A DNA stretch of 64,000 nucleotides from Mytilus californianus. Its lineage: Eukaryota. Shown in pieces: positions 127-13,768 of this stretch (position 1 is its first letter; each line of letters starts with the position of its first letter). The notes beneath the pieces were generated by a model that worked only from the letters and a program-made list of their open reading frames with translations, did not search any database and was not told where the DNA came from. The translations under genes and the position numbers were made by a program. Where the stretch lies: the NCBI RefSeq assembly GCF_021869535.1, contig NW_026262679.1, positions 48,546,001 to 48,610,000 of the forward strand, in the 5' to 3' direction.

Positions 127-2379
127 TCAATACTTTTGTAAATCAACTGGTTGACCCAACTTGTGTACTATCTCTTGCATAAGTTGGTGGTCCGTGTTTG
201 AAAAATCCATGGCATAACCTAATCGAAGAAATGCTTTCATATTTCTTTGCTTAACATATCCACTTTCCATGATATCGTAGTTTATTATGGCGATTCGCTT
301 GGATCTGTCATATTTATAATTATTCCAAATTAGTTTCCATTCGAGGTTCGCAAAATGATCTTCCAAATATTCATCCGACAATAGAACAATAAAAGACTTG
401 CATTTTGAAATTACTCCTCGAATTTCTTCTTCTCGTATCATGCCTGCATCAAAATCGCGACATGGTAAACAAAGTTTATAACCTTTGCTCTCTAAATGTT
501 TTATCAAGTCTTCCACAATCCATTTCCGAATAATTTCATTGTTTTCATCAAAGGATAGATATGCATCGTACGATATAGTTTTGTCGTCCATTTGAACCAG
601 TTCATTGTTTCCACTTCTGTAGTGAAAGGATATGCCAATTTGTCTTTTACATCTTAGTTTCCTGAATAATATCAATATTTCATATTTGAACTGAGAACAC
701 AGGAATGTCCCTATTGCTACACTTATGATTGTAACTCCCAGCAAGACATAACTCATAAAGCTTCGTTCTATGTCTTGATCTTCGCATAAATCAGATTTCG
801 AAACAAGAGCAGCATTAACGAAGCTTTCGTGTGTTTCACATGTTATTTGGTTGTATGAACAGTTAACTGCATGCTGTTTATGTAACCAAAGCTTTATCCA
901 TATCATGTCGCACGTACATTTTACAGTAATTTTTCCGAATCCTATTGCACAAGGATCTCTTAACAGGAGTTCTCTGTGCAGCGTTTGGATTTGATTATTT
1001 CTTAGATCAGTAAAGAGTATATTTTGTATTCTGTATATTGTAGGATCTACATTTACAATAAAGTTGAAGGATAAATTAATGCTAATTGTTCTTTCGAGGT
1101 ATTCGTGTTTTTGGAAAAATGTTATTTTGTTGTGTCTAAGATCAATGTCTAGGCCAGATAGGTCAGGAACGACATGGGGCATGCTAATATAAAGTTGTGA
1201 TGTGCAATTCACCACAACTCTATTTTTTGAAGGTTGATCAAAACAGTTACATCTTACAGGACATTTTTCTTTTTCTGTTATGTTGCAAATCAATAGGTCT
1301 GCAGTATGATTTTTCATCCTGAAATATCCTAGGCTGTAGCCCTTCAAATGAGGTGGGTAAACACATTTGGGCATACCCAATGTATAGTACTGATCCATAG
1401 CTTGAGAAGCCATAACCAAGTATCCATCCCACATTTTACAATCACATATCCATTTATTATAGAGTACATCAATTGTGTATCTAAACACAATTTTTAAGGC
1501 ATCATCAGCAGAAAATCCCAAAGTATTATACATAGGAAGGTTAGTGAATGAGTTATTCATCATCTGAATCAGTCCACCTCCAATTGAACCATTTACGAAA
1601 CCTGTATTATTTTTCAAATTTGTAATAGTTCTTAAATCGTTATTGAATATTTTTATAAAATCGAAGTAGTGTTTCAAAATTAAATCGCTTATATCAATAC
1701 TCTTTATGTTGTTGTATTGTAAGTGTATTTTCAGAAGACTTCCTGGTCGGTATGAGAAACATCCGGGTTCTAAATACTCGATTCTGTTATACGAAAAGTC
1801 AATTTGCCTCAAATTAGACAGACTAGCGAGAGAGGAAGCGTCGATTCTTTTGATTTTGTTATCAGACAGTATCAAACTATCGAGAGACTGTAGACATTCA
1901 AGGCTTGGTAAAAACTGGATTCTATTCCATGACAAATCCATTCTAACTATCGTTGGAAAATTGCAGATATTGTCAGGAAATTCCTTCAAAAACCCATGAT
2001 GATGCTCAAGATCATATAACTGATATTTGTTTTTACTTACAATTTTTGCGAATCCAATTAAGGAATTGTATTCGATAAACAAATCCCCCTTTAAGTAGGA
2101 ATATTTTCTAAATTCCCAAAATGGTTTTGATTTGATAGTGGAACAACATGCAGCGCTATCTCTATTATTGTTCATATACATAACAGGAAAACAACTTCCT
2201 TTTTCGAAAGGTAACTTTTTGCAGCATTGCATACAAAATAGAAATTTGCTAGCAATGGAAGGATGTTCCCATCTGAAGTATCCTTCAATATGTACATCCT
2301 TTTCGTTTACAATTGTGGCAGTTATGGATGTTGAGACTAAACATCCGATAACAAAATACACACATTGTTTATATCCTGT
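127..2379 (-). CDS. Toll-like receptor, multiple-cysteine-cluster (protostome) type; main coding exon
   Basis: The 744-aa ORF has LRRs (e.g. LDSLILSDNKIKRI, LRQIDFSYNRIEYL), an internal LRRCT (NKWICDC...PKCVYP), an LRRNT (CPVRCNC...VVVNC), three more LRRs, a second cysteine cap, a TM helix (YVLLGVTIISVAIGTFLC) and a TIR domain (YDAYLSF...LCLPCRDFDAG...FIVLLSDEY). The track starts at a GTG. The frame is open back to a TTTCAG acceptor at 2380-2385, giving a phase-0 exon of 2253 nt. Confidence 0.95.
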   Translation of the reverse strand, partial: TGYKQCVYFVIGCLVSTSITATIVNEKDVHIEGYFRWEHPSIASKFLFCMQCCKKLPFEKGSCFPVMYMNNNRDSAACCSTIKSKPFWEFRKYSYLKGDLFIEYNSLIGFAKIVSKNKYQLYDLEHHHGFLKEFPDNICNFPTIVRMDLSWNRIQFLPSLECLQSLDSLILSDNKIKRIDASSLASLSNLRQIDFSYNRIEYLEPGCFSYRPGSLLKIHLQYNNIKSIDISDLILKHYFDFIKIFNNDLRTITNLKNNTGFVNGSIGGGLIQMMNNSFTNLPMYNTLGFSADDALKIVFRYTIDVLYNKWICDCKMWDGYLVMASQAMDQYYTLGMPKCVYPPHLKGYSLGYFRMKNHTADLLICNITEKEKCPVRCNCFDQPSKNRVVVNCTSQLYISMPHVVPDLSGLDIDLRHNKITFFQKHEYLERTISINLSFNFIVNVDPTIYRIQNILFTDLRNNQIQTLHRELLLRDPCAIGFGKITVKCTCDMIWIKLWLHKQHAVNCSYNQITCETHESFVNAALVSKSDLCEDQDIERSFMSYVLLGVTIISVAIGTFLCSQFKYEILILFRKLRCKRQIGISFHYRSGNNELVQMDDKTISYDAYLSFDENNEIIRKWIVEDLIKHLESKGYKLCLPCRDFDAGMIREEEIRGVISKCKSFIVLLSDEYLEDHFANLEWKLIWNNYKYDRSKRIAIINYDIMESGYVKQRNMKAFLRLGYAMDFSNTDHQLMQEIVHKLGQPVDLQKY

Positions 2380-7402: not shown

Positions 7403-7590
7403 AGTCAAATGCGTTTTGTTAAAATATACTTTTTCACTCATTTGGTCTTTTGGAAAATGTTGTTTGTGCTGTATTTAGACCCCTCTACCAAGAAATTTGT
7501 TTTGCATGCACACGTATAAAAATTGCGGTTTTTATCCAACGCAATCATAGGTTTGAACGTTGTTTTCAATTTAGACTTGTTTATATATAT
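7403..7590 (+). repeat. Dispersed ~190-bp repeat ('X') that abuts (TA)n tracts
   Basis: tagtcaaatgcgttttg...catttggtcttttggaaaatgttgtttgtgctgtatttagacccctctaccaag...tttagacttg. Near-identical copies at 13190-13335 (-), 13768-13910 (+) and 34935-35110 (+). Confidence 0.9.
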
Positions 7591-7599
7591 ATACATGTC

Positions 7600-8740
7600 T
7601 AAACAGCTGATCTGAAAAGTACACCATCCACTATACATCATGTACTGTGTTACAACCATAGATAAAGCCGACGAGGAAAGGTATTACATCGACCACCGAA
7701 AGCTATATTTTTATGTAGCCTAGGTGGTCGAGTGGTCTATGGCGCTGGACACGGTGCAGGCGGTGTTGCCACGATGTCACAGAAGCAAGGGTTCGAATCC
7801 CGCTGAAGGAAGAACAAAATATTGCTAACGCAAATTTGAAGATCTAACATTGTTGGGCTAAATTTGAGACGAATTATATATACAGATTGTACACAGCCAT
7901 GTATCACCATCACTGCTGGTGATCCGATGGATAAATCAGTTGAAGAGTTGTCACTGGTTCAGACGTACTTATAAATATAATTATTTCTGTGACTGTATCT
8001 TGCATTAATTTGTAGGATCCTTTACAATAGATATTTCAGCTGATCTGTAACAATTCCATCTTCATGCCTTTTATATCATGTACTGTATTACGACGCTAGA
8101 TTAAAACTGACGAGGAAAGGTAACACCCGGCCACCGAAAGCTTTATTATGTGAAGCCTAGGTGGTCGTGTGGTCTAGAGCGTCGGATACAGTGTAGGCGA
8201 ATTGGTGTCACGATATCTCAGTAGCATGAGTTCGATTCCCGGCGAAGGAAGAACCAAAAATTTGCGAAAGCAAATTTACAGATCTAACATTGTTAGGCTG
8301 ATGTTTAGACGAGTTGTATATACAGAGTGTACACATTCATGCATCACCATCACTGCTGGTGATCCGATGGATGAATCTGTTGTAGAGTTGTCACTGGTTC
8401 AGACGTACTTATAAATATAATTATTTCTGTGACTGTATCTTGCATTAATTTGTAGGATCCTTTACAATAGATATTTCAGCTGATCTGTAACAATTCCATC
8501 TTCATGCCTTATATATCATGTACTGTATTACGACGCTAGATTAAAACTGACGAGGAAAGGTAACACCCGGCCACCGAAAGCTTTATTATGTGAAGCCTAG
8601 GTGGTTGTGTGGTCTAGAGCGTCGGATACAGTGCATGAGTTCGAATCCCGGCGAGGGAAGAACTAAAAATTTGCGAAAGCAAATTTACAGATCTAACATT
8701 GTTGGGCTGATGTTTAGACGAGTGGCATATATATATATAT
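7600..8740 (+). mobile_element. Tandem array (about 2.5 copies of a ~440-bp unit), each unit a hammerhead-like motif followed by a tRNA-derived head; retrozyme/SINE-like
   Basis: catgtactg recurs at 7639, 8077 and 8517 (periods 438 and 440). Each unit has CTGACGA GG...CC GAA AGCT (8107-8142, 8547-8582; CCGACGA in copy 1). This is followed by an A box (TGGTCGAGTGG at 7725) and a B box (GGTTCGAATCC at 7790). A partial copy lies at 13496-13683. Confidence 0.75.
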
Positions 8741-8745
8741 AAATA

Positions 8746-9942
8746 TGTTGTGTACAAGTTGCGATTTTTTACATGTTATAACTTGTACAATTCAAAAATA
8801 CAAGTTATAACATGTACAAAAGTACCTCGTACATGTTATAACATGTACAAAATATTGCTTAAAAATGGTTTTAACTTGTACAAAATTTGAAATTAAAGAT
8901 ATGTTTCTATTATTACAACACATGTCATTAACCTCAATACTATTTTCATCATTTTTTTAATTTTTCATTCATGTTAGTGTGTTTTGTCCTTTTTGATACT
9001 GTTAATGACCAGATGAATAGTTTTGATAATTACTTTAAAACACACATTTAGTCAACAAACATAATTCAGTATTCTCACCTGATGAATTATAATTGTAAGT
9101 TTCCACTCAGAAGGCAACAGTAAAATACTTTCATACTAGTTGAGACTTACGATGCAAGCGGATAGTCAGGATAGATTTTACAATGAAATCCTTGATATGT
9201 CGAGGAAAAATTCCTCTGCAAACAATACCTTGTTTTCAAAGGAGAGGATAGAAATTTATAACGTCAGAATGACATTCGACTCATGCAATGATCTTATTGA
9301 TTATCAAAAAAAAATAATTTGATGCATAAGATTTACATCAGTTATGATCAAGGCTAAAATGTTGAAGAGCAGATTCAATAACTCCAAAGTTATTTATAAT
9401 TAAGCGTGGTGCAATGAAAACCATTTTCTCTCTCTGGCTTTTATAGAGTGTGCATAAGAGATCTTGCTTTAATTTTTGCATGTTAAAAAAAGAAGGGGAG
9501 GGGTATAATTCAAATTTTTAAGGCATTATTCTTTAAAATATCAGATGAACCAGTTATTTACTTTGTTGCCATTGAGGAAATGTATGCTATTATTGCTGCT
9601 GTAGGCCATGGTGGACTGCATAAAACATACAATAACCTGAAAACGCATTATGCCAACATAAGCCGTGAAGCAATAAAAACATTTCTGAAACTTTGTGATC
9701 ACTGTGCTATAAAGAAAAAAACTTTCTGAGCTTTTGATTGTTGTTCTTTATTATTCACTAAATTTCAAATGTATATTCTGCTTTATTCTGCTTTATTTTT
9801 ATATTTTGTACAAGTTAAAACCATCAAGTTTTAAGCAATATTTTGTACATGTTATAACTATTTTTTTTGCATTGTACAATTTATTACATGTACAATATTT
9901 CTGTACATGTTATAACATGTATAAAATTGCTTGTACACGACA
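8746..9942 (+). mobile_element. Internally deleted Ginger-type (integrase) DNA transposon inserted in a TA tract
   Basis: TGT...ACA termini with imperfect TIRs (TGTTGTGTACAAG / CTTGTACACGACA) and repeated subterminal palindromes TGTACATGTTATAACATGTACA. The remnant frame 9544-9729 reads ...AVGHGGLHKTYNNLKTHYANISREAIKTFLKLCDHC, an integrase zinc-binding domain like KRABA2/GIN2. No DDE core is present. Confidence 0.75.
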
Positions 9943-10476: not shown

Positions 10477-11120
10477 AGTTCTATTAGATTTAAAATAGAT
10501 ATAAACAATATTTCGCTAGACAAACTAGCTTCATCAGGCGTGTGCATCTATCCAGGTGAAATCGGATGCATGACAAAAAATATGTTTGTAGCTTAAAATA
10601 CACACAGCAGTTGGAATAAAACATATTTAATGATGTTGTATGAATTGTACGAATTTCAAGAGGATTGTTTTTATTTGTTTTAAAATCTTTTCTCGTCTCT
10701 CTCCATCAAGTTCAAGAGTCCGTAACTAGTGCATCCAAAATCTCTCTCTCTCTTTTTTGTCTTCCTTGCGTGTCCCAATTTTGATTTTTATCATAGATTT
10801 GAAATGTGAAGTTTTCAAAATCATGCCCTTCTCTTAAAAGATGTAATTGAACAGTTTCTCTCTTTTGTATAAAATGACCGATGGTTATTTAGTCGGATGT
10901 TGAAAGGTGTTTCTGTTTAGAATATAAATACAATTTTGCGTTTTGCAATTGGATGTTATAAATAAGTTGTATTTTTTTTTTTTTACTGTGCTGTCGGTTT
11001 TGTTCATCACAACAACTGCACTTCCTTTGTCTGTTTGTTTAATAACAATATCATCTCGGCTTTTTAAGTTGTTCATGACTTGGCTTTCTTATTCTGAGAG
11101 ATTCCGTATGCGTTTGCCAC
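10477..11120 (-). mobile_element. Internally deleted, inverted Penelope-like element copy
   Basis: The reverse complement matches the RT N-terminal segment (DDIVIKQTDKGSAVVVM), joined directly to the GIY-YIG/3' segment of the neighbouring copy (12621-13167). A hammerhead motif lies at 10503-10541 (-). Confidence 0.9.
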
Positions 11121-11139
11121 TGACTAATGATTTTACTTC

Positions 11140-13167
11140 AGTTTTCAGAACAAGAAAGCCAAGATGATATTGTTATTAAACAAGCAGACAAAGGAAGTGC
11201 AGTTGTTGTGATGACCATAACCGACTACATTGAAGAAGGGAATCGTCAGCTCTCAAACACAAATTTTTACAAACAATTAGAATGTGATCCTACAAAAGAA
11301 ATTAGCAAAAAAATTTAATGAGGTCCTTTCAGATATGAATAGCAAAAAACACATAGATGACGACACGTACGACTATCTACGCCCTGGTGAAACCTGCACA
11401 GCCGGTCGTTTTTACTTGCTCCCAAAACCTCATAAAGAAAGGATTCCGGGAAGACCTATAGTATCTGCCAATGGCCACCCAACCGAAAAAATATCTGAAT
11501 TCGTTGATTACCATCTTAGACCACATGTTAGAACAATGCCATCATACATTCAAGCCTACAACAGATTATTTGAAGAAAATGGATTCATTAAATCCCTTAC
11601 CAAACAACACAATTTTGGTATCGATGGATGTGTGTTCCCTGTACACTAATATTCCAAAGAATGAAGGAGTAGTCGCTTGTGAAAAAGTATGGAATAATCG
11701 TAAAGATAAACATCCCACAACCGACTGTCTGGTTCAGTTGCTGAAACTAGAAACAACAATTTTGTATTCAACAACCAGCACTACTTGCAGACTGACGGTA
11801 CCAGTATGGGAACCAAAATGGCACCTTCTTTTGCCAACATTTTCATGGGGAATCTCGAAGAACGCATCCTTTCGAATGTGCCATACGAACCCTTGACTTG
11901 GCTCCGTTATATTGATAACATCCGACATCAAATGGAACGAAACTGCAGAACATCTACAAGATTTTCTAGATCTTTGTGATAACTTTTATCAATCTATAAA
12001 GTTCACATCTGAAGTTTCAAATGAGAAAATTGCGTTTCTCGACACCACCATAACTTTAGAAAACGGAGTCATAACAACCGACCTTCACACAAAAAAAAAT
12101 GACAAACACCAATTTCTCTCTCCGAAGAGTTGTCACCCAAAACACTGTTCCCAAAGCATTCCGTACAGCCAAGCTATTGGGTTAAAATGAATCAAAATTA
12201 AACCACGATGCCCGTTTGGGAAAACTCAGACAGCACCTTAAATCAAGAGGTTATAAGAACAAAAACATTTCAGAAGCTTTCTGGTAAAGCAAAAGAAAAA
12301 GACCGAACAAACCTACTTGAATACAAAGAAAAGACGGCCCAGACGAATAAAATTCCGTTTGTTGTCAGCTTTCATCCTGACCTAACAAATCTTTCATCTA
12401 TTATCCACAAACACTGGCGTCTTATTGAAAATGATCCTTCCTTAAAAGAGATTTTTCCATCACCTCCCGTTATGGCTTACTGTAGACCCAAAAACCCCAA
12501 AGATATTCTAGTAACATCTAAAGTATCTAAACAAGAGACATCGACAATAGGAGGTTATAAACCATGCGGAAGAGTCAATTGTAAGTTCTGCAAAGTCGCC
12601 AACATTGAAACCCAATTCGTAAGCAGTCACAAAAAATTAAATACAACATATTTATAACATTCAATTGGAAAACGCAAAATTGTATTTATGTTCTAACGTG
12701 TGTAACTTGCAAGTTGCAATATGTTGGTGAAACAGAAACACCTTTCAACATCCGACTGAATAACAATCGGTCATTTTATACAAAAGAAAGAAACTGTCCA
12801 ATTACAAGATATCTTTTAAAAGAAGGGCATGATTTTGAAAACGTCACATTTCAAATCATTGAGAAAAACCAAAATTGGGACACACAAGAAAGACAAAAAA
12901 GAGAGAGATTTTGGATGCACCAGTTACGGACTCTTGAAAATTATGGACTCAATGAGAGAGACGAGAAAAGATTTTAAAACAAAGAAAAACAGTAATCTTG
13001 AAATTCGTACAATTTATACAATATCATTAAATATGTTAAACTATTATTCCAACTGTTTGTAGTTTAAGCTACAAAAATATTTTTTGTCGTGCATCCAATT
13101 TCACACGCCTGATGAAGCTAGTTTGTCTAGTGAAATATTGCGTATATCTATTTTAAATCTAATAGAA
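11140..13167 (+). mobile_element. Penelope-like retroelement (RT + GIY-YIG endonuclease), 5'-truncated and frameshifted
   Basis: Motifs across frames: IKQADKG, RFYLLPKPHK...[48 protein letters not shown] (YIDD degenerated to YIDN), FLDTTI, and CIYVLTC..C..QYVGET (GIY-YIG). A hammerhead sits in the 3' end. Confidence 0.93.
13105..13143 (+). ncRNA. Minimal type I hammerhead ribozyme in the Penelope-like 3' end
   Basis: ACGC CTGATGA A GCTAG-tttgt-CTAGT GAA ATAT T GCGT. It has a 4-bp stem I, a 5-bp stem II and a palindromic ATAT stem III. Confidence 0.8.
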
Positions 13168-13681
13168 TATGTATACATATATATATATATATAAGTCTAA
13201 ATTGAAAACAACGTTCAAACCTATGATTGCGTTGGATAAAAACCGCAATTTTTATACGTGTGCATGCAAAACAAATTTCTTGGTAGAGGGGGCTAAATAC
13301 AGCACAAACAACAATTTCCAAAAGACCAAATAATCTATATATTATATATAAATTTGTTTTACATGCACACGTATAAAAATTGCGGTTTTTATCCAACGCA
13401 TTTCATAGGTTTGAACGTTGTTTTCAATTTAGACTTGTATATATATATATATACACACAAGTCAAAATTGAAAACAATGTTCAAACCTATGATTGACAGG
13501 CGGTGTTGTCTCGATATCCCAATAGCATGAATTCGAATCCCGGCGAGGGAAGAACAAAAATTTGCTTCCGCAAATTTGCAAATTTAACATTGTTGTGCTG
13601 ATATTTAGAGTAGTTACGAATATAATATGTGTTTTCAATGGATGGATCTGTCGTAGAGTTGTCACTTTTTCAGACGTGCTT

Positions 13682-13684
<3 letters not shown>

Positions 13685-13768
<84 letters not shown>
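13685..13768. repeat. (TA)n microsatellite of about 40 units
   Basis: Directly visible. It explains the spurious IYIY ORF. Confidence 0.98.

What the first reader, a model, noticed from the sequence alone, without database searches (positions are those of the whole stretch)
7600..8740. Tandem ~440-nt unit coupling a hammerhead ribozyme to a tRNA-derived Pol III promoter (retrozyme/SINE hybrid)
Seen: each unit reads ...attaaaa CTGACGA GG(aaaggtaacacccggcca)CC GAA AGCT T tattatg, then about 15 nt later a tRNA-like head with an A box (perfect TGGTCGAGTGG in copy 1) and a B box (GGTTCGAATCC). The middle unit (8077-8517) contains no TTTT run. Known: minimal type I hammerheads with palindromic stem III act as dimers in tandem repeats; non-LTR retrozymes giving small circRNAs have been reported in metazoans including mussels; Schistosoma Sm-alpha repeats combine Pol III boxes with a hammerhead. 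Inference: Pol III read-through into the next unit plus self-cleavage would release ~440-nt monomers that could circularise and be mobilised by Penelope-type RT in trans. A Penelope-like element lies 2.5 kb away. Stem I is weak (one mismatch) and stem II is unusually looped, so activity is unproven.
Basis: partly seen in the sequence, partly recalled or inferred. Interest (0 to 1): 0.8.

Follow-up and report, generated by a model that had tools for sequence, protein, structure and literature searches.

The report
Mussel tandem retroelement, hammerhead look-alike
This is a 2.6-unit copy of a very abundant, highly transcribed, non-coding jumping element of a Mytilus mussel that carries a tRNA-type promoter and inserts like a Penelope-type retroelement, but its "hammerhead ribozyme" letters belong to a different, well-supported RNA fold.

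Summary
Window 7604-8740 holds 2.6 tandem ~440-bp units, each with CUGACGA...GAAAGCU letters followed by tRNA-type A and B boxes. The family has about 2,000 or more copies in a 1.65-Gb Mytilus genome.

Arrays always end at the same ...GTATATA inside (TA)n. Their 5' ends vary and often carry an inverted piece, as Penelope-like elements (PLEs) do. Stranded RNA-seq shows abundant one-strand transcripts.

The hammerhead reading fails.
- No Rfam hammerhead matches, although the published mussel retrozyme hammerhead is found as a control.
- Helix I is no better than shuffled controls.
- The hammerhead fold costs about 12 kcal/mol more than the best fold.
- No RNA ends pile up at the predicted cut.

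Four subfamilies instead covary for a ~120-nt rod. In it the upstream "leader" pairs with the A-box region. The "C3-U4" letters sit in a small covarying stem. A covarying hairpin with an oligo-T loop lies just before the promoter.

Best reading: a Pol III-type, PLE-mobilised, retrozyme-like tandem element without a working hammerhead.

This scan reached the same reading for this family on other DNA (s1-312205, s1-352223). I derived mine before seeing those notes.

The parts
7583..7603 (.). (TA)n-rich target remnant at the 5' edge of the insertion. It follows the tail of another SINE-like element ('X', 7450-7597).
   Evidence: I5, I6. Across the fetched loci, 22 of 58 arrays have (TA)>=4 at the 5' flank, against a 3.4% background.
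7604..7882 (+). Unit 1, a 5'-truncated copy of subfamily B. It holds CCGACGA at 7668-7674, GAAAGCT at 7698-7704, hairpin arms at 7702-7707 and 7714-7719, A box at 7725-7735, B box at 7790-7800, and a tail ending TATATATA at 7875-7882.
   Evidence: This stretch is 94-96% identical to dispersed B copies, but only 66-80% identical (per repeat block) to unit 2 over the same part.
7883..8076 (+). Family-A spacer (unit positions 247-441). It joins the B tail exactly at the TATATA. This is either a template switch or an insertion into the B element's tail.
   Evidence: Repeat D1: 7815-8114 is 93% identical to 8255-8554. Alignment.
8077..8517 (+).
8079..8196 (+). Covarying RNA rod. Leader 8079-8101 pairs with 8173-8196. 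8124-8135 (CAC.CGGCCACC) pairs with the A-box region 8161-8172. The hairpin sits at the tip.
   Evidence: Circular minimum-free-energy folds of the A and B consensus. Pair counts: 94% paired against 25-41% when slid, 8 pairs with double changes, 0 of 500 shuffles. RNAalifold finds the same rod independently: 42 pairs, 10 compensatory.
8102..8123 (+). The hammerhead look-alike 5' half (TAAAA CTGACGA GGAAAGG TAA). In the supported fold it is a small stem-loop, ACU/GGU closing a 10-nt loop GACGAGGAAA. In subfamily B the stem is GCC/GGC.
   Evidence: pairs 31-46 (AU 11, GC 6), 32-45 and 33-44. The block is invariant in subfamilies A, C and D.
8136..8143 (+). GAAAGCTT, the supposed G12-A14, helix III palindrome AGCT and H17. 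The predicted cut is at 8143/8144. GCTT is in fact the start of the 5' arm of the covarying hairpin.
8140..8156 (+). Covarying hairpin, GCTTTA / TGAAGC, with a T-rich loop. In most relatives the loop is T4-T7, a Pol III-type terminator immediately upstream of the A box. The loop is also the most variable stretch of the family.
   Evidence: 99% of cells paired and 4 of 6 pairs with double changes; one pair shows AU, UA, CG and GC. T-run statistics. Column entropy 0.56 against 0.08-0.21 elsewhere.
8162..8239 (+). tRNA-derived promoter region of unit 2: A-box-like TGGTCGTGTGG at 8162-8172 and B-box-like GAGTTCGATTCC at 8228-8239.
   Evidence: The boxes are conserved across subfamilies. ARAGORN and the Rfam tRNA model do not recognise a tRNA here.
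8252..8322 (+). 3' tail module, with the AAATTTGC-GAAA-GCAAATTT hairpin, ending ...TTTAGACGAGTTGTATATA. Position 8322 (unit position 246) is the invariant 3' end of arrays genome-wide.
   Evidence: more than 25 arrays on many contigs end at query position 246.
8518..8731 (+). Unit 3, the terminal partial unit (positions 1-246) with a 31-nt deletion between the A and B boxes. It ends at the family's canonical 3' end.
   Evidence: (locus L001).
8556..8557 (+). Place where many RNA-seq molecules start (GACGAGGA|AA), inside the loop of the small stem-loop. Unexplained.
   Evidence: table 6: 261+190 molecules in run X21 and 289 in X22, beside a depth of about 925-970.
8726..8748 (.). (TA)n at the 3' junction: element tail plus target microsatellite.
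   Evidence: I5. 35 of 58 arrays have (TA)>=4 at the 3' end.
10477..13167 (.). Degenerate head-to-head Penelope-like element, also inserted at (TA)n, with minimal hammerheads. It shows the kind of helper that may mobilise the family, but it is not shown to be the partner.
   Evidence: It shares no sequence with the unit beyond TA repeats.

Best explanation
The stretch is one chimeric insertion of a high-copy, non-coding, Mytilus-specific retroelement built of ~440-bp units. A 5'-truncated subfamily-B unit comes first, followed by family-A units.

Each unit appears to be its own Pol III-type transcription unit. It has tRNA-derived A and B boxes. An oligo-T tract lies in the loop of a hairpin immediately upstream of the next unit's boxes.

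The ~95 nt in front of the boxes include the CUGACGA...GAAAGCU letters. They do not form a hammerhead. They pair with the first ~45 nt of the tRNA-like head in a long rod that carries a small side stem-loop. In a unit-length transcript this would be a panhandle holding the RNA's two ends together at the oligo-U loop.

New copies are made by target-primed reverse transcription by a Penelope-like RT/endonuclease at (TA)n microsatellites. Priming occurs on the internal UAUAUA of the tail, which fixes the 3' end. Copying then continues round the unit, which gives tandem arrays with variable 5' ends and occasional inverted 5' pieces. The copying could run on read-through multimers (family A often lacks T4), by a jump across the nick, or on circles.

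Shown here:
- the family, its fixed and variable ends, and its (TA)n targets;
- the covarying fold;
- strand-biased high expression;
- the failure of the hammerhead tests.

Inferred:
- Pol III use;
- the position of the RNA ends;
- PLE as helper;
- the way arrays arise.
For: Family and genome:
- At least 201 scored matches out of 2,275 candidates for unit A, and 3,269 candidates for subfamily B.
- 1,940 exact anchor hits against 0-1 for the control.
- The genome is a Mytilus: 10,262 copies of the published M. galloprovincialis retrozyme hammerhead (sequence from PMC7229834).

Insertion signature:
- Arrays end at unit position 246 and begin anywhere from about 33 to 414, clustering at 184-198. 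About six independent arrays have an inverted 5' piece.
- (TA)>=4 is found at 38% of 5' flanks and 60% of 3' ends, against 3.4% background.
- PLEs are reported to prefer (TA)n and to form tandem and inverted insertions (PMC8557442).

Fold:
- Hairpin covariation.
- Rod: 94% paired, 36 cells with double changes, 0 of 500 shuffles.
- RNAalifold predicts the same rod independently, plus the small stem ACU/GGU to GCC/GGC.
- Circular minimum-free-energy z-scores are -5.0 and -5.6.

[quoted passage not shown] - On the + strand, T>=4 runs are essentially confined to the hairpin loop. Shuffled units have a mean of 2.7 runs, with P(0) = 0.05. The - strand always has T4 and T6 runs.
- The loop is the family's most variable stretch.

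Expression:
- Depth is 500-2,000x on one direction against 15-60x on the other in two stranded runs.

Against the hammerhead.

Within-array identity is 96.9% against 94.1% between arrays.
Against: - The tRNA models (ARAGORN, Rfam) do not recognise the head. Conservation of the A box could reflect its pairing with the leader and not promoter function.
- Only 36% of family-A units have T>=4 in the loop.
- The RNA ends were not mapped. The one sharp terminus seen (8556/8557) is neither at the oligo-T loop nor predicted by this model. About 55-100 reads per run cross a T7 loop.
- The strandedness of the libraries was assumed, not checked.
- The reads are only 90-95% like this copy, so they come from a related variant, possibly of another Mytilus species.
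- No helper element was identified. The PLE in the window shares no tail with the unit.
- LINE-type twin priming could also give inverted 5' pieces.
- The hammerhead core letters, the G10.1-C11.1 pair and the palindromic AGCU do match the published minimal-hammerhead descriptor. A transient co-transcriptional hammerhead cannot be excluded by computation.
Confidence: 0.6

Rival explanations
1. The motif is a working minimal type I hammerhead that acts in dimers through the palindromic AGCU. It cuts Pol III read-through multimers into ~440-nt monomers, which are circularised. This would make the element a true retrozyme/SINE hybrid.
For: - The core letters CUGANGA, GAAA, G10.1-C11.1 and the palindromic 15.2-16.2 pair are present in subfamilies A, C and D.
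- These are features of the published PLE minimal hammerheads (PMC4209133). Rfam also misses those hammerheads, so the lack of an Rfam hit is not decisive.
- The variant that dominates the RNA has H17 = C and U7 opposite A4.
- The element has tandem architecture, a PLE-like insertion pattern and abundant RNA, as retrozymes do.
- Rod-versus-hammerhead alternative folds are known in viroid-like RNAs.
Against: - Helix I is 67% paired with no covariation, and 426 of 500 shuffles do as well.
- The supposed 3' strand of helix I, and the cut site itself, lie in the 5' arm of a hairpin that is 99% paired and shows four pair types.
- C3-U4 pair with GG(U/C), with compensatory change.
- The hammerhead conformer scores +1.5 against -10.2 kcal/mol, and cofolding of two copies does not form it.
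- Subfamily C has G17 and subfamily B has CCGA, yet both amplified to thousands of copies.
- No read ends pile up at 8583/8584.
- No genomic 5' ends lie at unit position 68.
Confidence: 0.13
2. An ordinary LINE-dependent tRNA-derived SINE. Its copies became a local satellite through unequal crossing-over. The leader is just upstream unit sequence.
For: - It has A and B boxes, a microsatellite-like tail and a length within the SINE range (criteria in PMC11481361).
- Higher-order repeat patterns within a long array suggest amplification after insertion (loci L014 and L024).
- Tandem and palindromic SINE structures are described in bivalves.
Against: - DNA copies do not begin at the tRNA head. 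Their 5' ends are spread over the whole unit.
- Multi-unit arrays with the same 3' end occur on at least 15 contigs.
- Both flanks are (TA)n, so this is insertion into a microsatellite and not just a tail.
- The leader covaries with the head, so it is part of the functional RNA.
Confidence: 0.12
3. The small stem-loop that carries the hammerhead-like letters is a genuine RNA-processing site. It is cut at GACGAGGA|AA by a host nuclease or by an unrecognised self-cleaving fold, and this defines the unit-length RNA.
For: - Molecule starts are sharp at 8556/8557 in two runs and account for about half of the adjacent depth, with no loose ends reported there.
- The 10-nt loop is invariant across subfamilies A to D.
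Against: - The partner end was not seen.
- The pattern can be technical: this is the last single-stranded priming site before a base-paired 3' end.
- If the library's first mate is sense, it is instead a 5' end of an antisense RNA.
- No Rfam ribozyme family matches at E<=10.
- Genomic copies show no boundary at this position.
Confidence: 0.1

Closest known systems
Metazoan non-LTR retrozymes (Cervera & de la Pena 2020, PMC7229834), including the M. galloprovincialis ~350-390-bp family
   Same: Both are AT-rich, non-coding tandem units of a few hundred bp. Both have thousands of copies, abundant RNA and a highly self-paired predicted RNA. Both coexist with, and are presumed to depend on, Penelope-like elements.
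   Different: - No valid hammerhead here. The published family's hammerhead scores 32.5 bits (E 2e-6) against Rfam Hammerhead_1, while this unit scores nothing.
- The sequence is unrelated to the Mg353 construct.
- This unit carries tRNA-type A and B boxes and an oligo-T tract.
- It inserts in (TA)n, unlike the one published-family locus inspected (L061).
- Circular RNA is not shown.
Schistosoma Sm-alpha repeats (Ferbeyre et al. 1998; recalled from my own knowledge, paper not held)
   Same: A short repeated element that combines Pol III-type A and B boxes with hammerhead letters.
   Different: The Sm-alpha hammerhead is canonical and cleaves. Here the letters are part of another covarying fold, and the helices needed for a hammerhead are not supported.
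Minimal hammerheads of Penelope-like elements (Cervera & de la Pena 2014, PMC4209133)
   Same: Shared features are CUGANGA, G10.1-C11.1, GAA, and A-NN-U with a palindromic 15.2-16.2 pair. Both occur in tandem context. An example sits in this window at 13109-13147.
   Different: PLE minimal hammerheads have a 5-8-bp helix II, a 4-5-bp helix I with compensatory changes, and an extra nucleotide after A9. None of these is met here.
tRNA-derived SINEs of bivalves (PMC11481361)
   Same: A and B boxes, a microsatellite tail and a length of 200-700 nt.
   Different: - The promoter lies mid-unit behind a ~95-nt leader that pairs with it.
- Copies are tandem multimers truncated anywhere along the unit.
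- Insertion is into (TA)n, with inverted 5' pieces.
- tRNA-finding tools do not recognise the head.
Pol III transcripts closed by a 5'/3' terminal stem (Y RNA, vault RNA; my own knowledge, analogy only)
   Same: An internal promoter, an oligo-U 3' end, and the two ends paired in a long stem.
   Different: Those are host genes, not mobile elements. Here the end positions are inferred, not mapped.

Membership tests
Hammerhead ribozyme (type I or minimal) | Conserved core CUGANGA ... GAAA | tested here: inconclusive
   Present in subfamilies A, C and D. The subfamily B consensus reads CCGACGA. The letters are invariant together with their non-core neighbours, so the conservation is not core-specific.
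Hammerhead ribozyme (type I or minimal) | Helix I of 4 or more bp flanking the cut, kept by compensatory changes | tested here: not met
   67% of cells paired, and only 12% for the outermost pair. Covariation score 0.089 against 0.113 for shuffles.
Hammerhead ribozyme (type I or minimal) | Helix II closed by G10.1-C11.1 | tested here: inconclusive
   The GG/CC closing pairs are present but invariant. The helix is interrupted (2 bp, an AAA/A loop, then 3 bp). The CC also pairs with the A-box GG in the rod.
Hammerhead ribozyme (type I or minimal) | A15.1-U16.1 and an NUH cut site that is free to form helix III | tested here: not met
   H17 is U (A), A (B), C (D) and G (C). The site lies inside the 5' arm of a hairpin that is 99% paired and shows AU, UA, CG and GC at one pair.
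Hammerhead ribozyme (type I or minimal) | Match to a curated covariance model | tested here: not met
   No Rfam hammerhead family matches at E<=10 in 400-1,500-nt searches. The positive control is found at E 2.1e-6. Caveat: PLE minimal hammerheads are also missed.
Hammerhead ribozyme (type I or minimal) | Self-cleavage at the predicted bond | not testable with these tools
   Indirect evidence only. There is no pile-up of read ends at 8583/8584, 86-99 reads per run cross that site, and no genomic 5' ends lie at unit position 68.
Metazoan non-LTR retrozyme | Short AT-rich tandem repeats, dispersed in many arrays | tested here: met
   441-bp unit with 40% G+C, in arrays on many contigs.
Metazoan non-LTR retrozyme | A type I hammerhead in every unit | tested here: not met
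   See the hammerhead rows above.
Metazoan non-LTR retrozyme | Expressed as small circular RNA | tested here: inconclusive
   Strand-biased RNA is abundant. Reads across the unit junction cannot tell circles from tandem DNA templates.
tRNA-derived SINE | [quoted passage not shown] | tested here: met
   TGGTCGAGTGG and GGTTCGAATCC lie 54 nt apart in unit 1 and subfamily B.
tRNA-derived SINE | Head recognisable as a tRNA and placed at the 5' end of copies | tested here: not met
   ARAGORN and the Rfam tRNA model find nothing. The head lies mid-unit, and 5' ends are scattered.
tRNA-derived SINE | LINE-derived tail and target-site duplications | not tested
   No LINE partner was sought. Target-site duplications cannot be read inside (TA)n.
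Non-autonomous element mobilised by Penelope-like elements | Tandem and inverted partial copies, 5' truncation, microsatellite (TA)n target | tested here: met
   compared with the description in PMC8557442.
Non-autonomous element mobilised by Penelope-like elements | Sequence shared with the pseudo-LTR or tail of an autonomous PLE | tested here: not met
   Only the one PLE in the window could be compared, and it shares nothing beyond TA repeats. Other PLE clades of this genome were not compared.

The most novel reading that the evidence does not exclude
This would be a ribozyme-free route to retrozyme-like behaviour. A Pol III transcript begins and ends in the loop of one hairpin, so its promoter-proximal 5' end and oligo-U 3' end are clamped together by a covarying panhandle. 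A Penelope-type reverse transcriptase, primed on an internal UAUAUA by a (TA)n target, can then run round the nicked or ligated circle repeatedly and lay down tandem arrays. The conserved hammerhead-like stem-loop, where RNA-seq molecules start at GACGAGGA|AA, would serve as a processing or protein-binding site.
Probability: 0.3. Interest if true: 0.7.

Novelty: new variant of a known kind. Interest (0 to 1): 0.5.

Why it matters
Animal retrozymes are currently defined by their hammerheads, and SINEs by dependence on LINEs. This family is a very successful, highly expressed tandem retroelement with Penelope-type insertion scars. It brings its own Pol III-type promoter and terminator and apparently needs no ribozyme.

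If confirmed, three things would follow:
- Penelope-like reverse transcriptases can be parasitised by Pol III-driven RNAs, in effect a "PLE-SINE".
- Tandem arrays can arise without self-cleavage.
- Hammerhead-like letters in such repeats must be tested against covariation before they are counted as ribozymes.

The last point bears on genome-wide censuses made with minimal-hammerhead descriptors.

Tried and rejected
- Tandem Repeats Finder did not report the 440-bp array. The repeat finder did.
- Rfam at gathering threshold over the whole window returned nothing. At E<=10 the only hits on the unit were chance microRNA and small-RNA matches; no hammerhead, twister, tRNA or 5S.
- ARAGORN found no tRNA in the window.
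- The tRNA-like part plus tail does not fold as a cloverleaf (z = -1.4).
- I considered the hairpin as helix III of a type I hammerhead. Rejected: position 16.1 would be C, and the following AGGUGG has no partner for helix I.
- I considered a type III permutation with GCUA|GAUUAAAA. Rejected: there is no stem I hairpin and it is not conserved.
- I considered a hammerhead on the minus strand. Rejected: no CUGANGA or GAAA there.
Rejected: no Rfam twister hit, and the RNA terminus is 5 nt from the would-be U|A site.
- I considered polyadenylation at 8556/8557, 11-12 nt after AUUAAA. No poly(A) loose ends were reported, so this is left open but unlikely.
- I considered a Helitron or Helentron-borne satellite. 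Rejected because of 5' truncation with a fixed 3' end and strand-specific RNA.
- I looked for the RNA-seq variant (hairpin GCTCT7GAGAGC) in this genome. Only 3 near matches turned up, so the reads probably come from a related species or strain.
- I compared the unit with the neighbouring PLE for a shared tail. None was found.
- Pfam on the PLE's RT-side ORF fragments gave no hit.
- The Sm-alpha paper could not be read.
Subfamilies E and F, and any helper elements, were therefore not analysed.
Full report
**Observation.** Window 7604-8740 holds about 2.6 head-to-tail units with 437-440-nt spacing (repeat families D1-D7). Tandem Repeats Finder missed the array. Units 2 and 3 read ATTAAAA-CTGACGA-GG...CC-GAAAGCTT-TATTATG. 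About 15 nt later come an A-box-like and a B-box-like element. Unit 1 has the perfect boxes, TGGTCGAGTGG at 7725-7735 and GGTTCGAATCC at 7790-7800, but its "core" reads CCGACGA. Unit 3 has a 31-nt deletion between the boxes. The stretch 8077-8517 has no TTTT. A degenerate head-to-head Penelope-like element (PLE) lies at 10477-13167. It has a GIY-YIG hit at E 3e-4 and two minimal hammerheads.

**Genome and family.** The window's genome is 1.65 Gb in 175 contigs. It holds 10,262 copies (up to 2 mismatches) of the hammerhead of the published Mytilus galloprovincialis retrozyme, against 0 for the control (sequence from the supplement of PMC7229834). The genome is therefore a Mytilus.
- The published ~350-390-bp family is unrelated in sequence to the unit studied here.
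- The 441-bp unit ("A") gave at least 201 scored matches out of 2,275 candidates, at 93-97% identity, in arrays on many contigs.
- Window unit 1 belongs to a second subfamily ("B", 3,269 candidates).
- Subfamilies C, D, E and F were seen in loci and in an unbiased anchor search, which gave 1,940 exact hits against 0-1 for the control.
- The window's array is thus a chimera. A 5'-truncated B unit (7604-7882) is joined exactly at its TATATA tail to family-A sequence.

**Insertion signature.** In the fetched loci every array ends at unit position 246 (window 8322...GACGAGTTGTATATA). The 5' ends lie anywhere from about 33 to 414, with a cluster at 184-198. About six independent arrays carry an inverted partial copy at the 5' end.
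- (TA)>=4 lies at 38% of 5' flanks and 60% of 3' ends, against 3.4% of random 35-nt windows. The element therefore lands inside (TA)n microsatellites.
- This combination is what Craig et al. describe for PLEs: a microsatellite (TA)n bias and "complex tandem/inverted insertions" (PMC8557442).
- Units within an array are more alike (96.9%) than units of different arrays (94.1%).
- No 5' ends fall at the predicted hammerhead cut (unit position 68).

**Testing the hammerhead.**
1. No Rfam hammerhead, twister or tRNA model matches at E<=10 in searches of 400-1,500 nt of subfamilies A, B and D. As a control, the same search finds the published retrozyme hammerhead at 32.5 bits, E 2.1e-6. It misses the PLE minimal hammerhead in the window, so this test excludes a canonical but not a minimal hammerhead.
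2. I aligned 18 copies of four subfamilies (A1). Its covariation is below the shuffled mean, and 426 of 500 shuffles do as well.
3. The predicted cut site and the "3' strand of helix I" lie in the 5' arm of a hairpin directly after GAAA. That hairpin is 99% paired. Four of its six pairs show changes on both sides, and one pair occurs as AU, UA, CG and GC.
4. H17 is G in subfamily C. Subfamily B has U4->C. Both subfamilies amplified to high copy number.
5. On unit positions 10-84 the hammerhead conformer evaluates at +1.5 kcal/mol, against -10.2 for the minimum-free-energy fold. Cofolding two copies does not form the AGCU helix III.
6. Of the four hallmarks listed for PLE minimal hammerheads (PMC4209133), two are present: G10.1-C11.1 and the palindromic 15.2-16.2 pair. 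Two are absent: compensatory changes in the helices and the extra nucleotide after A9.

**What the letters belong to.** Circular minimum-free-energy folds of the A and B consensus units (z = -5.0 and -5.6) both give the same long rod.
- Unit positions 3-25 pair with 97-120.
- Positions 48-59 (CAC.CGGCCACC, the supposed 3' half of helix II) pair with the A-box region 85-96 (GGTGGTCG.TGTG).
- The covarying hairpin sits at the tip.

On a 136-column alignment (A2), 94.2% of cells are paired, against 25-41% when the partners are slid by 1-3 columns. Eight pairs and 36 cells show changes on both sides, and 0 of 500 shuffles reach that. Examples:
- columns 11-117: GC or AU;
- columns 19-108: GC, CG or UA;
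- columns 56-95: AU, GU or GC.

RNAalifold, run independently, predicts the same rod with 42 pairs, 10 of them compensatory. It adds a small stem-loop in which the "C3-U4" letters pair with GG(U/C). The stem is ACU/GGU in subfamilies A, C and D, and GCC/GGC in B. Subfamily B's CCGA is therefore half of a compensatory change, not a crippled core. The conserved GACGAGGAAA is the 10-nt loop of this stem.

Between A and B, unit positions 1-240 (leader, head and tail) are 75-95% identical. The spacer at 241-420 is 35-80% identical.

**Pol III-type features.**
- The A and B boxes are conserved in all subfamilies.
- On the + strand, T>=4 runs are confined to the hairpin loop just upstream of the A box. 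They occur there in 15 of 42 A units and in all 3 typed B units; other T-runs are sporadic.
- Shuffled units carry a mean of 2.7 such runs, with P(0) = 0.05.
- The minus strand always has T4 and T6 runs.
- The loop is the most variable stretch of family A, with column entropy 0.56 against 0.08-0.21 elsewhere.
- A tRNA-type start site would fall in or just after this loop. That is inference from the usual 10-20-nt distance to the A box.

A unit-length transcript would therefore begin and end in the loop. The covarying rod would be a panhandle between its two ends. Family A often lacks T4 and forms the longest arrays, which fits read-through multimers.

**RNA.** Two stranded raw-read runs of a Mytilus species were laid on 7450-8900 at 90% or greater likeness.
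- Depth is 500-2,000x with the first mate on the - strand, against 15-60x on the other. If these are dUTP-type libraries, as most stranded libraries are, the RNA is + strand. I could not check this.
- Almost all reads are 90-95% alike, so they come from a related variant whose hairpin reads GCTC-T7-GAGAGC. That is another compensated version. It is nearly absent from this genome.
- 86-99 reads per run cross the predicted cut at 8583/8584, and no pile-up of ends is reported there.
- Instead, 261+190 molecules (X21) and 289 (X22) start exactly at 8556/8557, in GACGAGGA|AA, the loop of the small stem-loop.
- I cannot explain this. It may be a true RNA end, the 5' end of an antisense RNA if the first mate is sense, or the last single-stranded priming site before a base-paired 3' end.
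- Low coverage of unit positions 41-108 is at least partly a mapping effect of divergence.

**Mechanism proposed.**
- Shown: the family, its ends, the (TA)n targets, the covarying fold, high strand-biased expression, and the failure of the hammerhead tests.
- Inferred, step 1: Pol III transcribes each unit from its internal boxes to the oligo-T loop, or through it in family A.
- Inferred, step 2: a PLE-type endonuclease and RT nicks (TA)n, and the TA-rich DNA end primes on the internal UAUAUA. That fixes the 3' end at position 246.
- Inferred, step 3: reverse transcription continues past the RNA's 5' end, on multimers, across the nick of the panhandle, or on ligated circles. This produces tandem arrays, scattered 5' ends, and switches between RNAs at the TATATA, as in the window's B/A chimera.

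**Comparison with what is known.** The element works like an animal non-LTR retrozyme (PMC7229834; bioRxiv 10.64898/2026.07.22.740005). It fails that family's defining feature, the hammerhead. It resembles a tRNA-derived SINE in promoter and tail (criteria in PMC11481361) but not in the position of the head, the copy structure or the target. Sm-alpha of Schistosoma, recalled from my own knowledge, is the nearest precedent for Pol III boxes combined with hammerhead letters. I found no description of this family in the papers searched.

Earlier notes of this scan on other DNA of the same genome (s1-312205, s1-352223) reached the same reading of a 441-bp Pol III-driven, Penelope-style element whose leader pairs with the start of its own RNA. 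I saw those notes. They are not independent evidence.

**Limits.**
- No wet-lab tests were possible.
- No genomic loci could be fetched.
- The helper element was not identified.

Noticed in passing
window 127-2361 (-): An intact 744-aa ORF with LRR (LRR_8, E 7.6e-13) and TIR (E 1.1e-12) domains. This is a Toll-like-receptor-type host gene. It would serve to check RNA-seq library strandedness.
   Followed up: partly
window 7450-7597 (+), with an inverted copy at 13186-13300: Another SINE-like repeat ('X') ending ...CAATTTAGACTTGTTTATATATA. Its tail resembles the 440-bp unit's tail (TTTAGAC-N-TATATA). It lies next to (TA)n at both the array and the PLE, and the same repeat flanks many fetched loci. 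It is covered at 200-420x, strand-biased, in RNA-seq.
   Followed up: partly
window 8556-8557: Sharp pile-up of RNA-seq molecule starts inside the conserved GACGAGGAAA loop. Unexplained; see the notebook entry.
   Followed up: partly
window 8764-8890 and 9867-9937: Arrays of a 29-33-nt palindromic unit (TACAAGTTATAACATGTACAAAA) forming long hairpins. They give only sub-threshold microRNA-like Rfam scores of 14-24 bits.
   Followed up: no
window 13497-13691 (+): A further fragment of the same family (unit positions ~128-240 and 291-344, 82-85% identity), just beyond the PLE and another (TA)n tract.
   Followed up: no
window 10477-13167: Head-to-head PLE pair. Each arm ends in a minimal hammerhead, CTGATGA-A-GCTAG...CTAGY-GAA-ATAT-T, followed by a ~40-nt tail and (TA)n. 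The ORF is broken by stops and frameshifts.
   Followed up: partly
loci L014, L015, L023 and L024 (G000 contig C2, 44.22-44.23 Mb): A ~9-kb array of the family with an inverted part. Identity values recur with a period of about four units, which suggests higher-order amplification after insertion.
   Followed up: no
L061:1100-2100, compared with window 8340-8370: The published Mg retrozyme family and this unit share the 11-mer CACTGCTGGTG within a local hairpin. This could be chance or a shared module.
   Followed up: no
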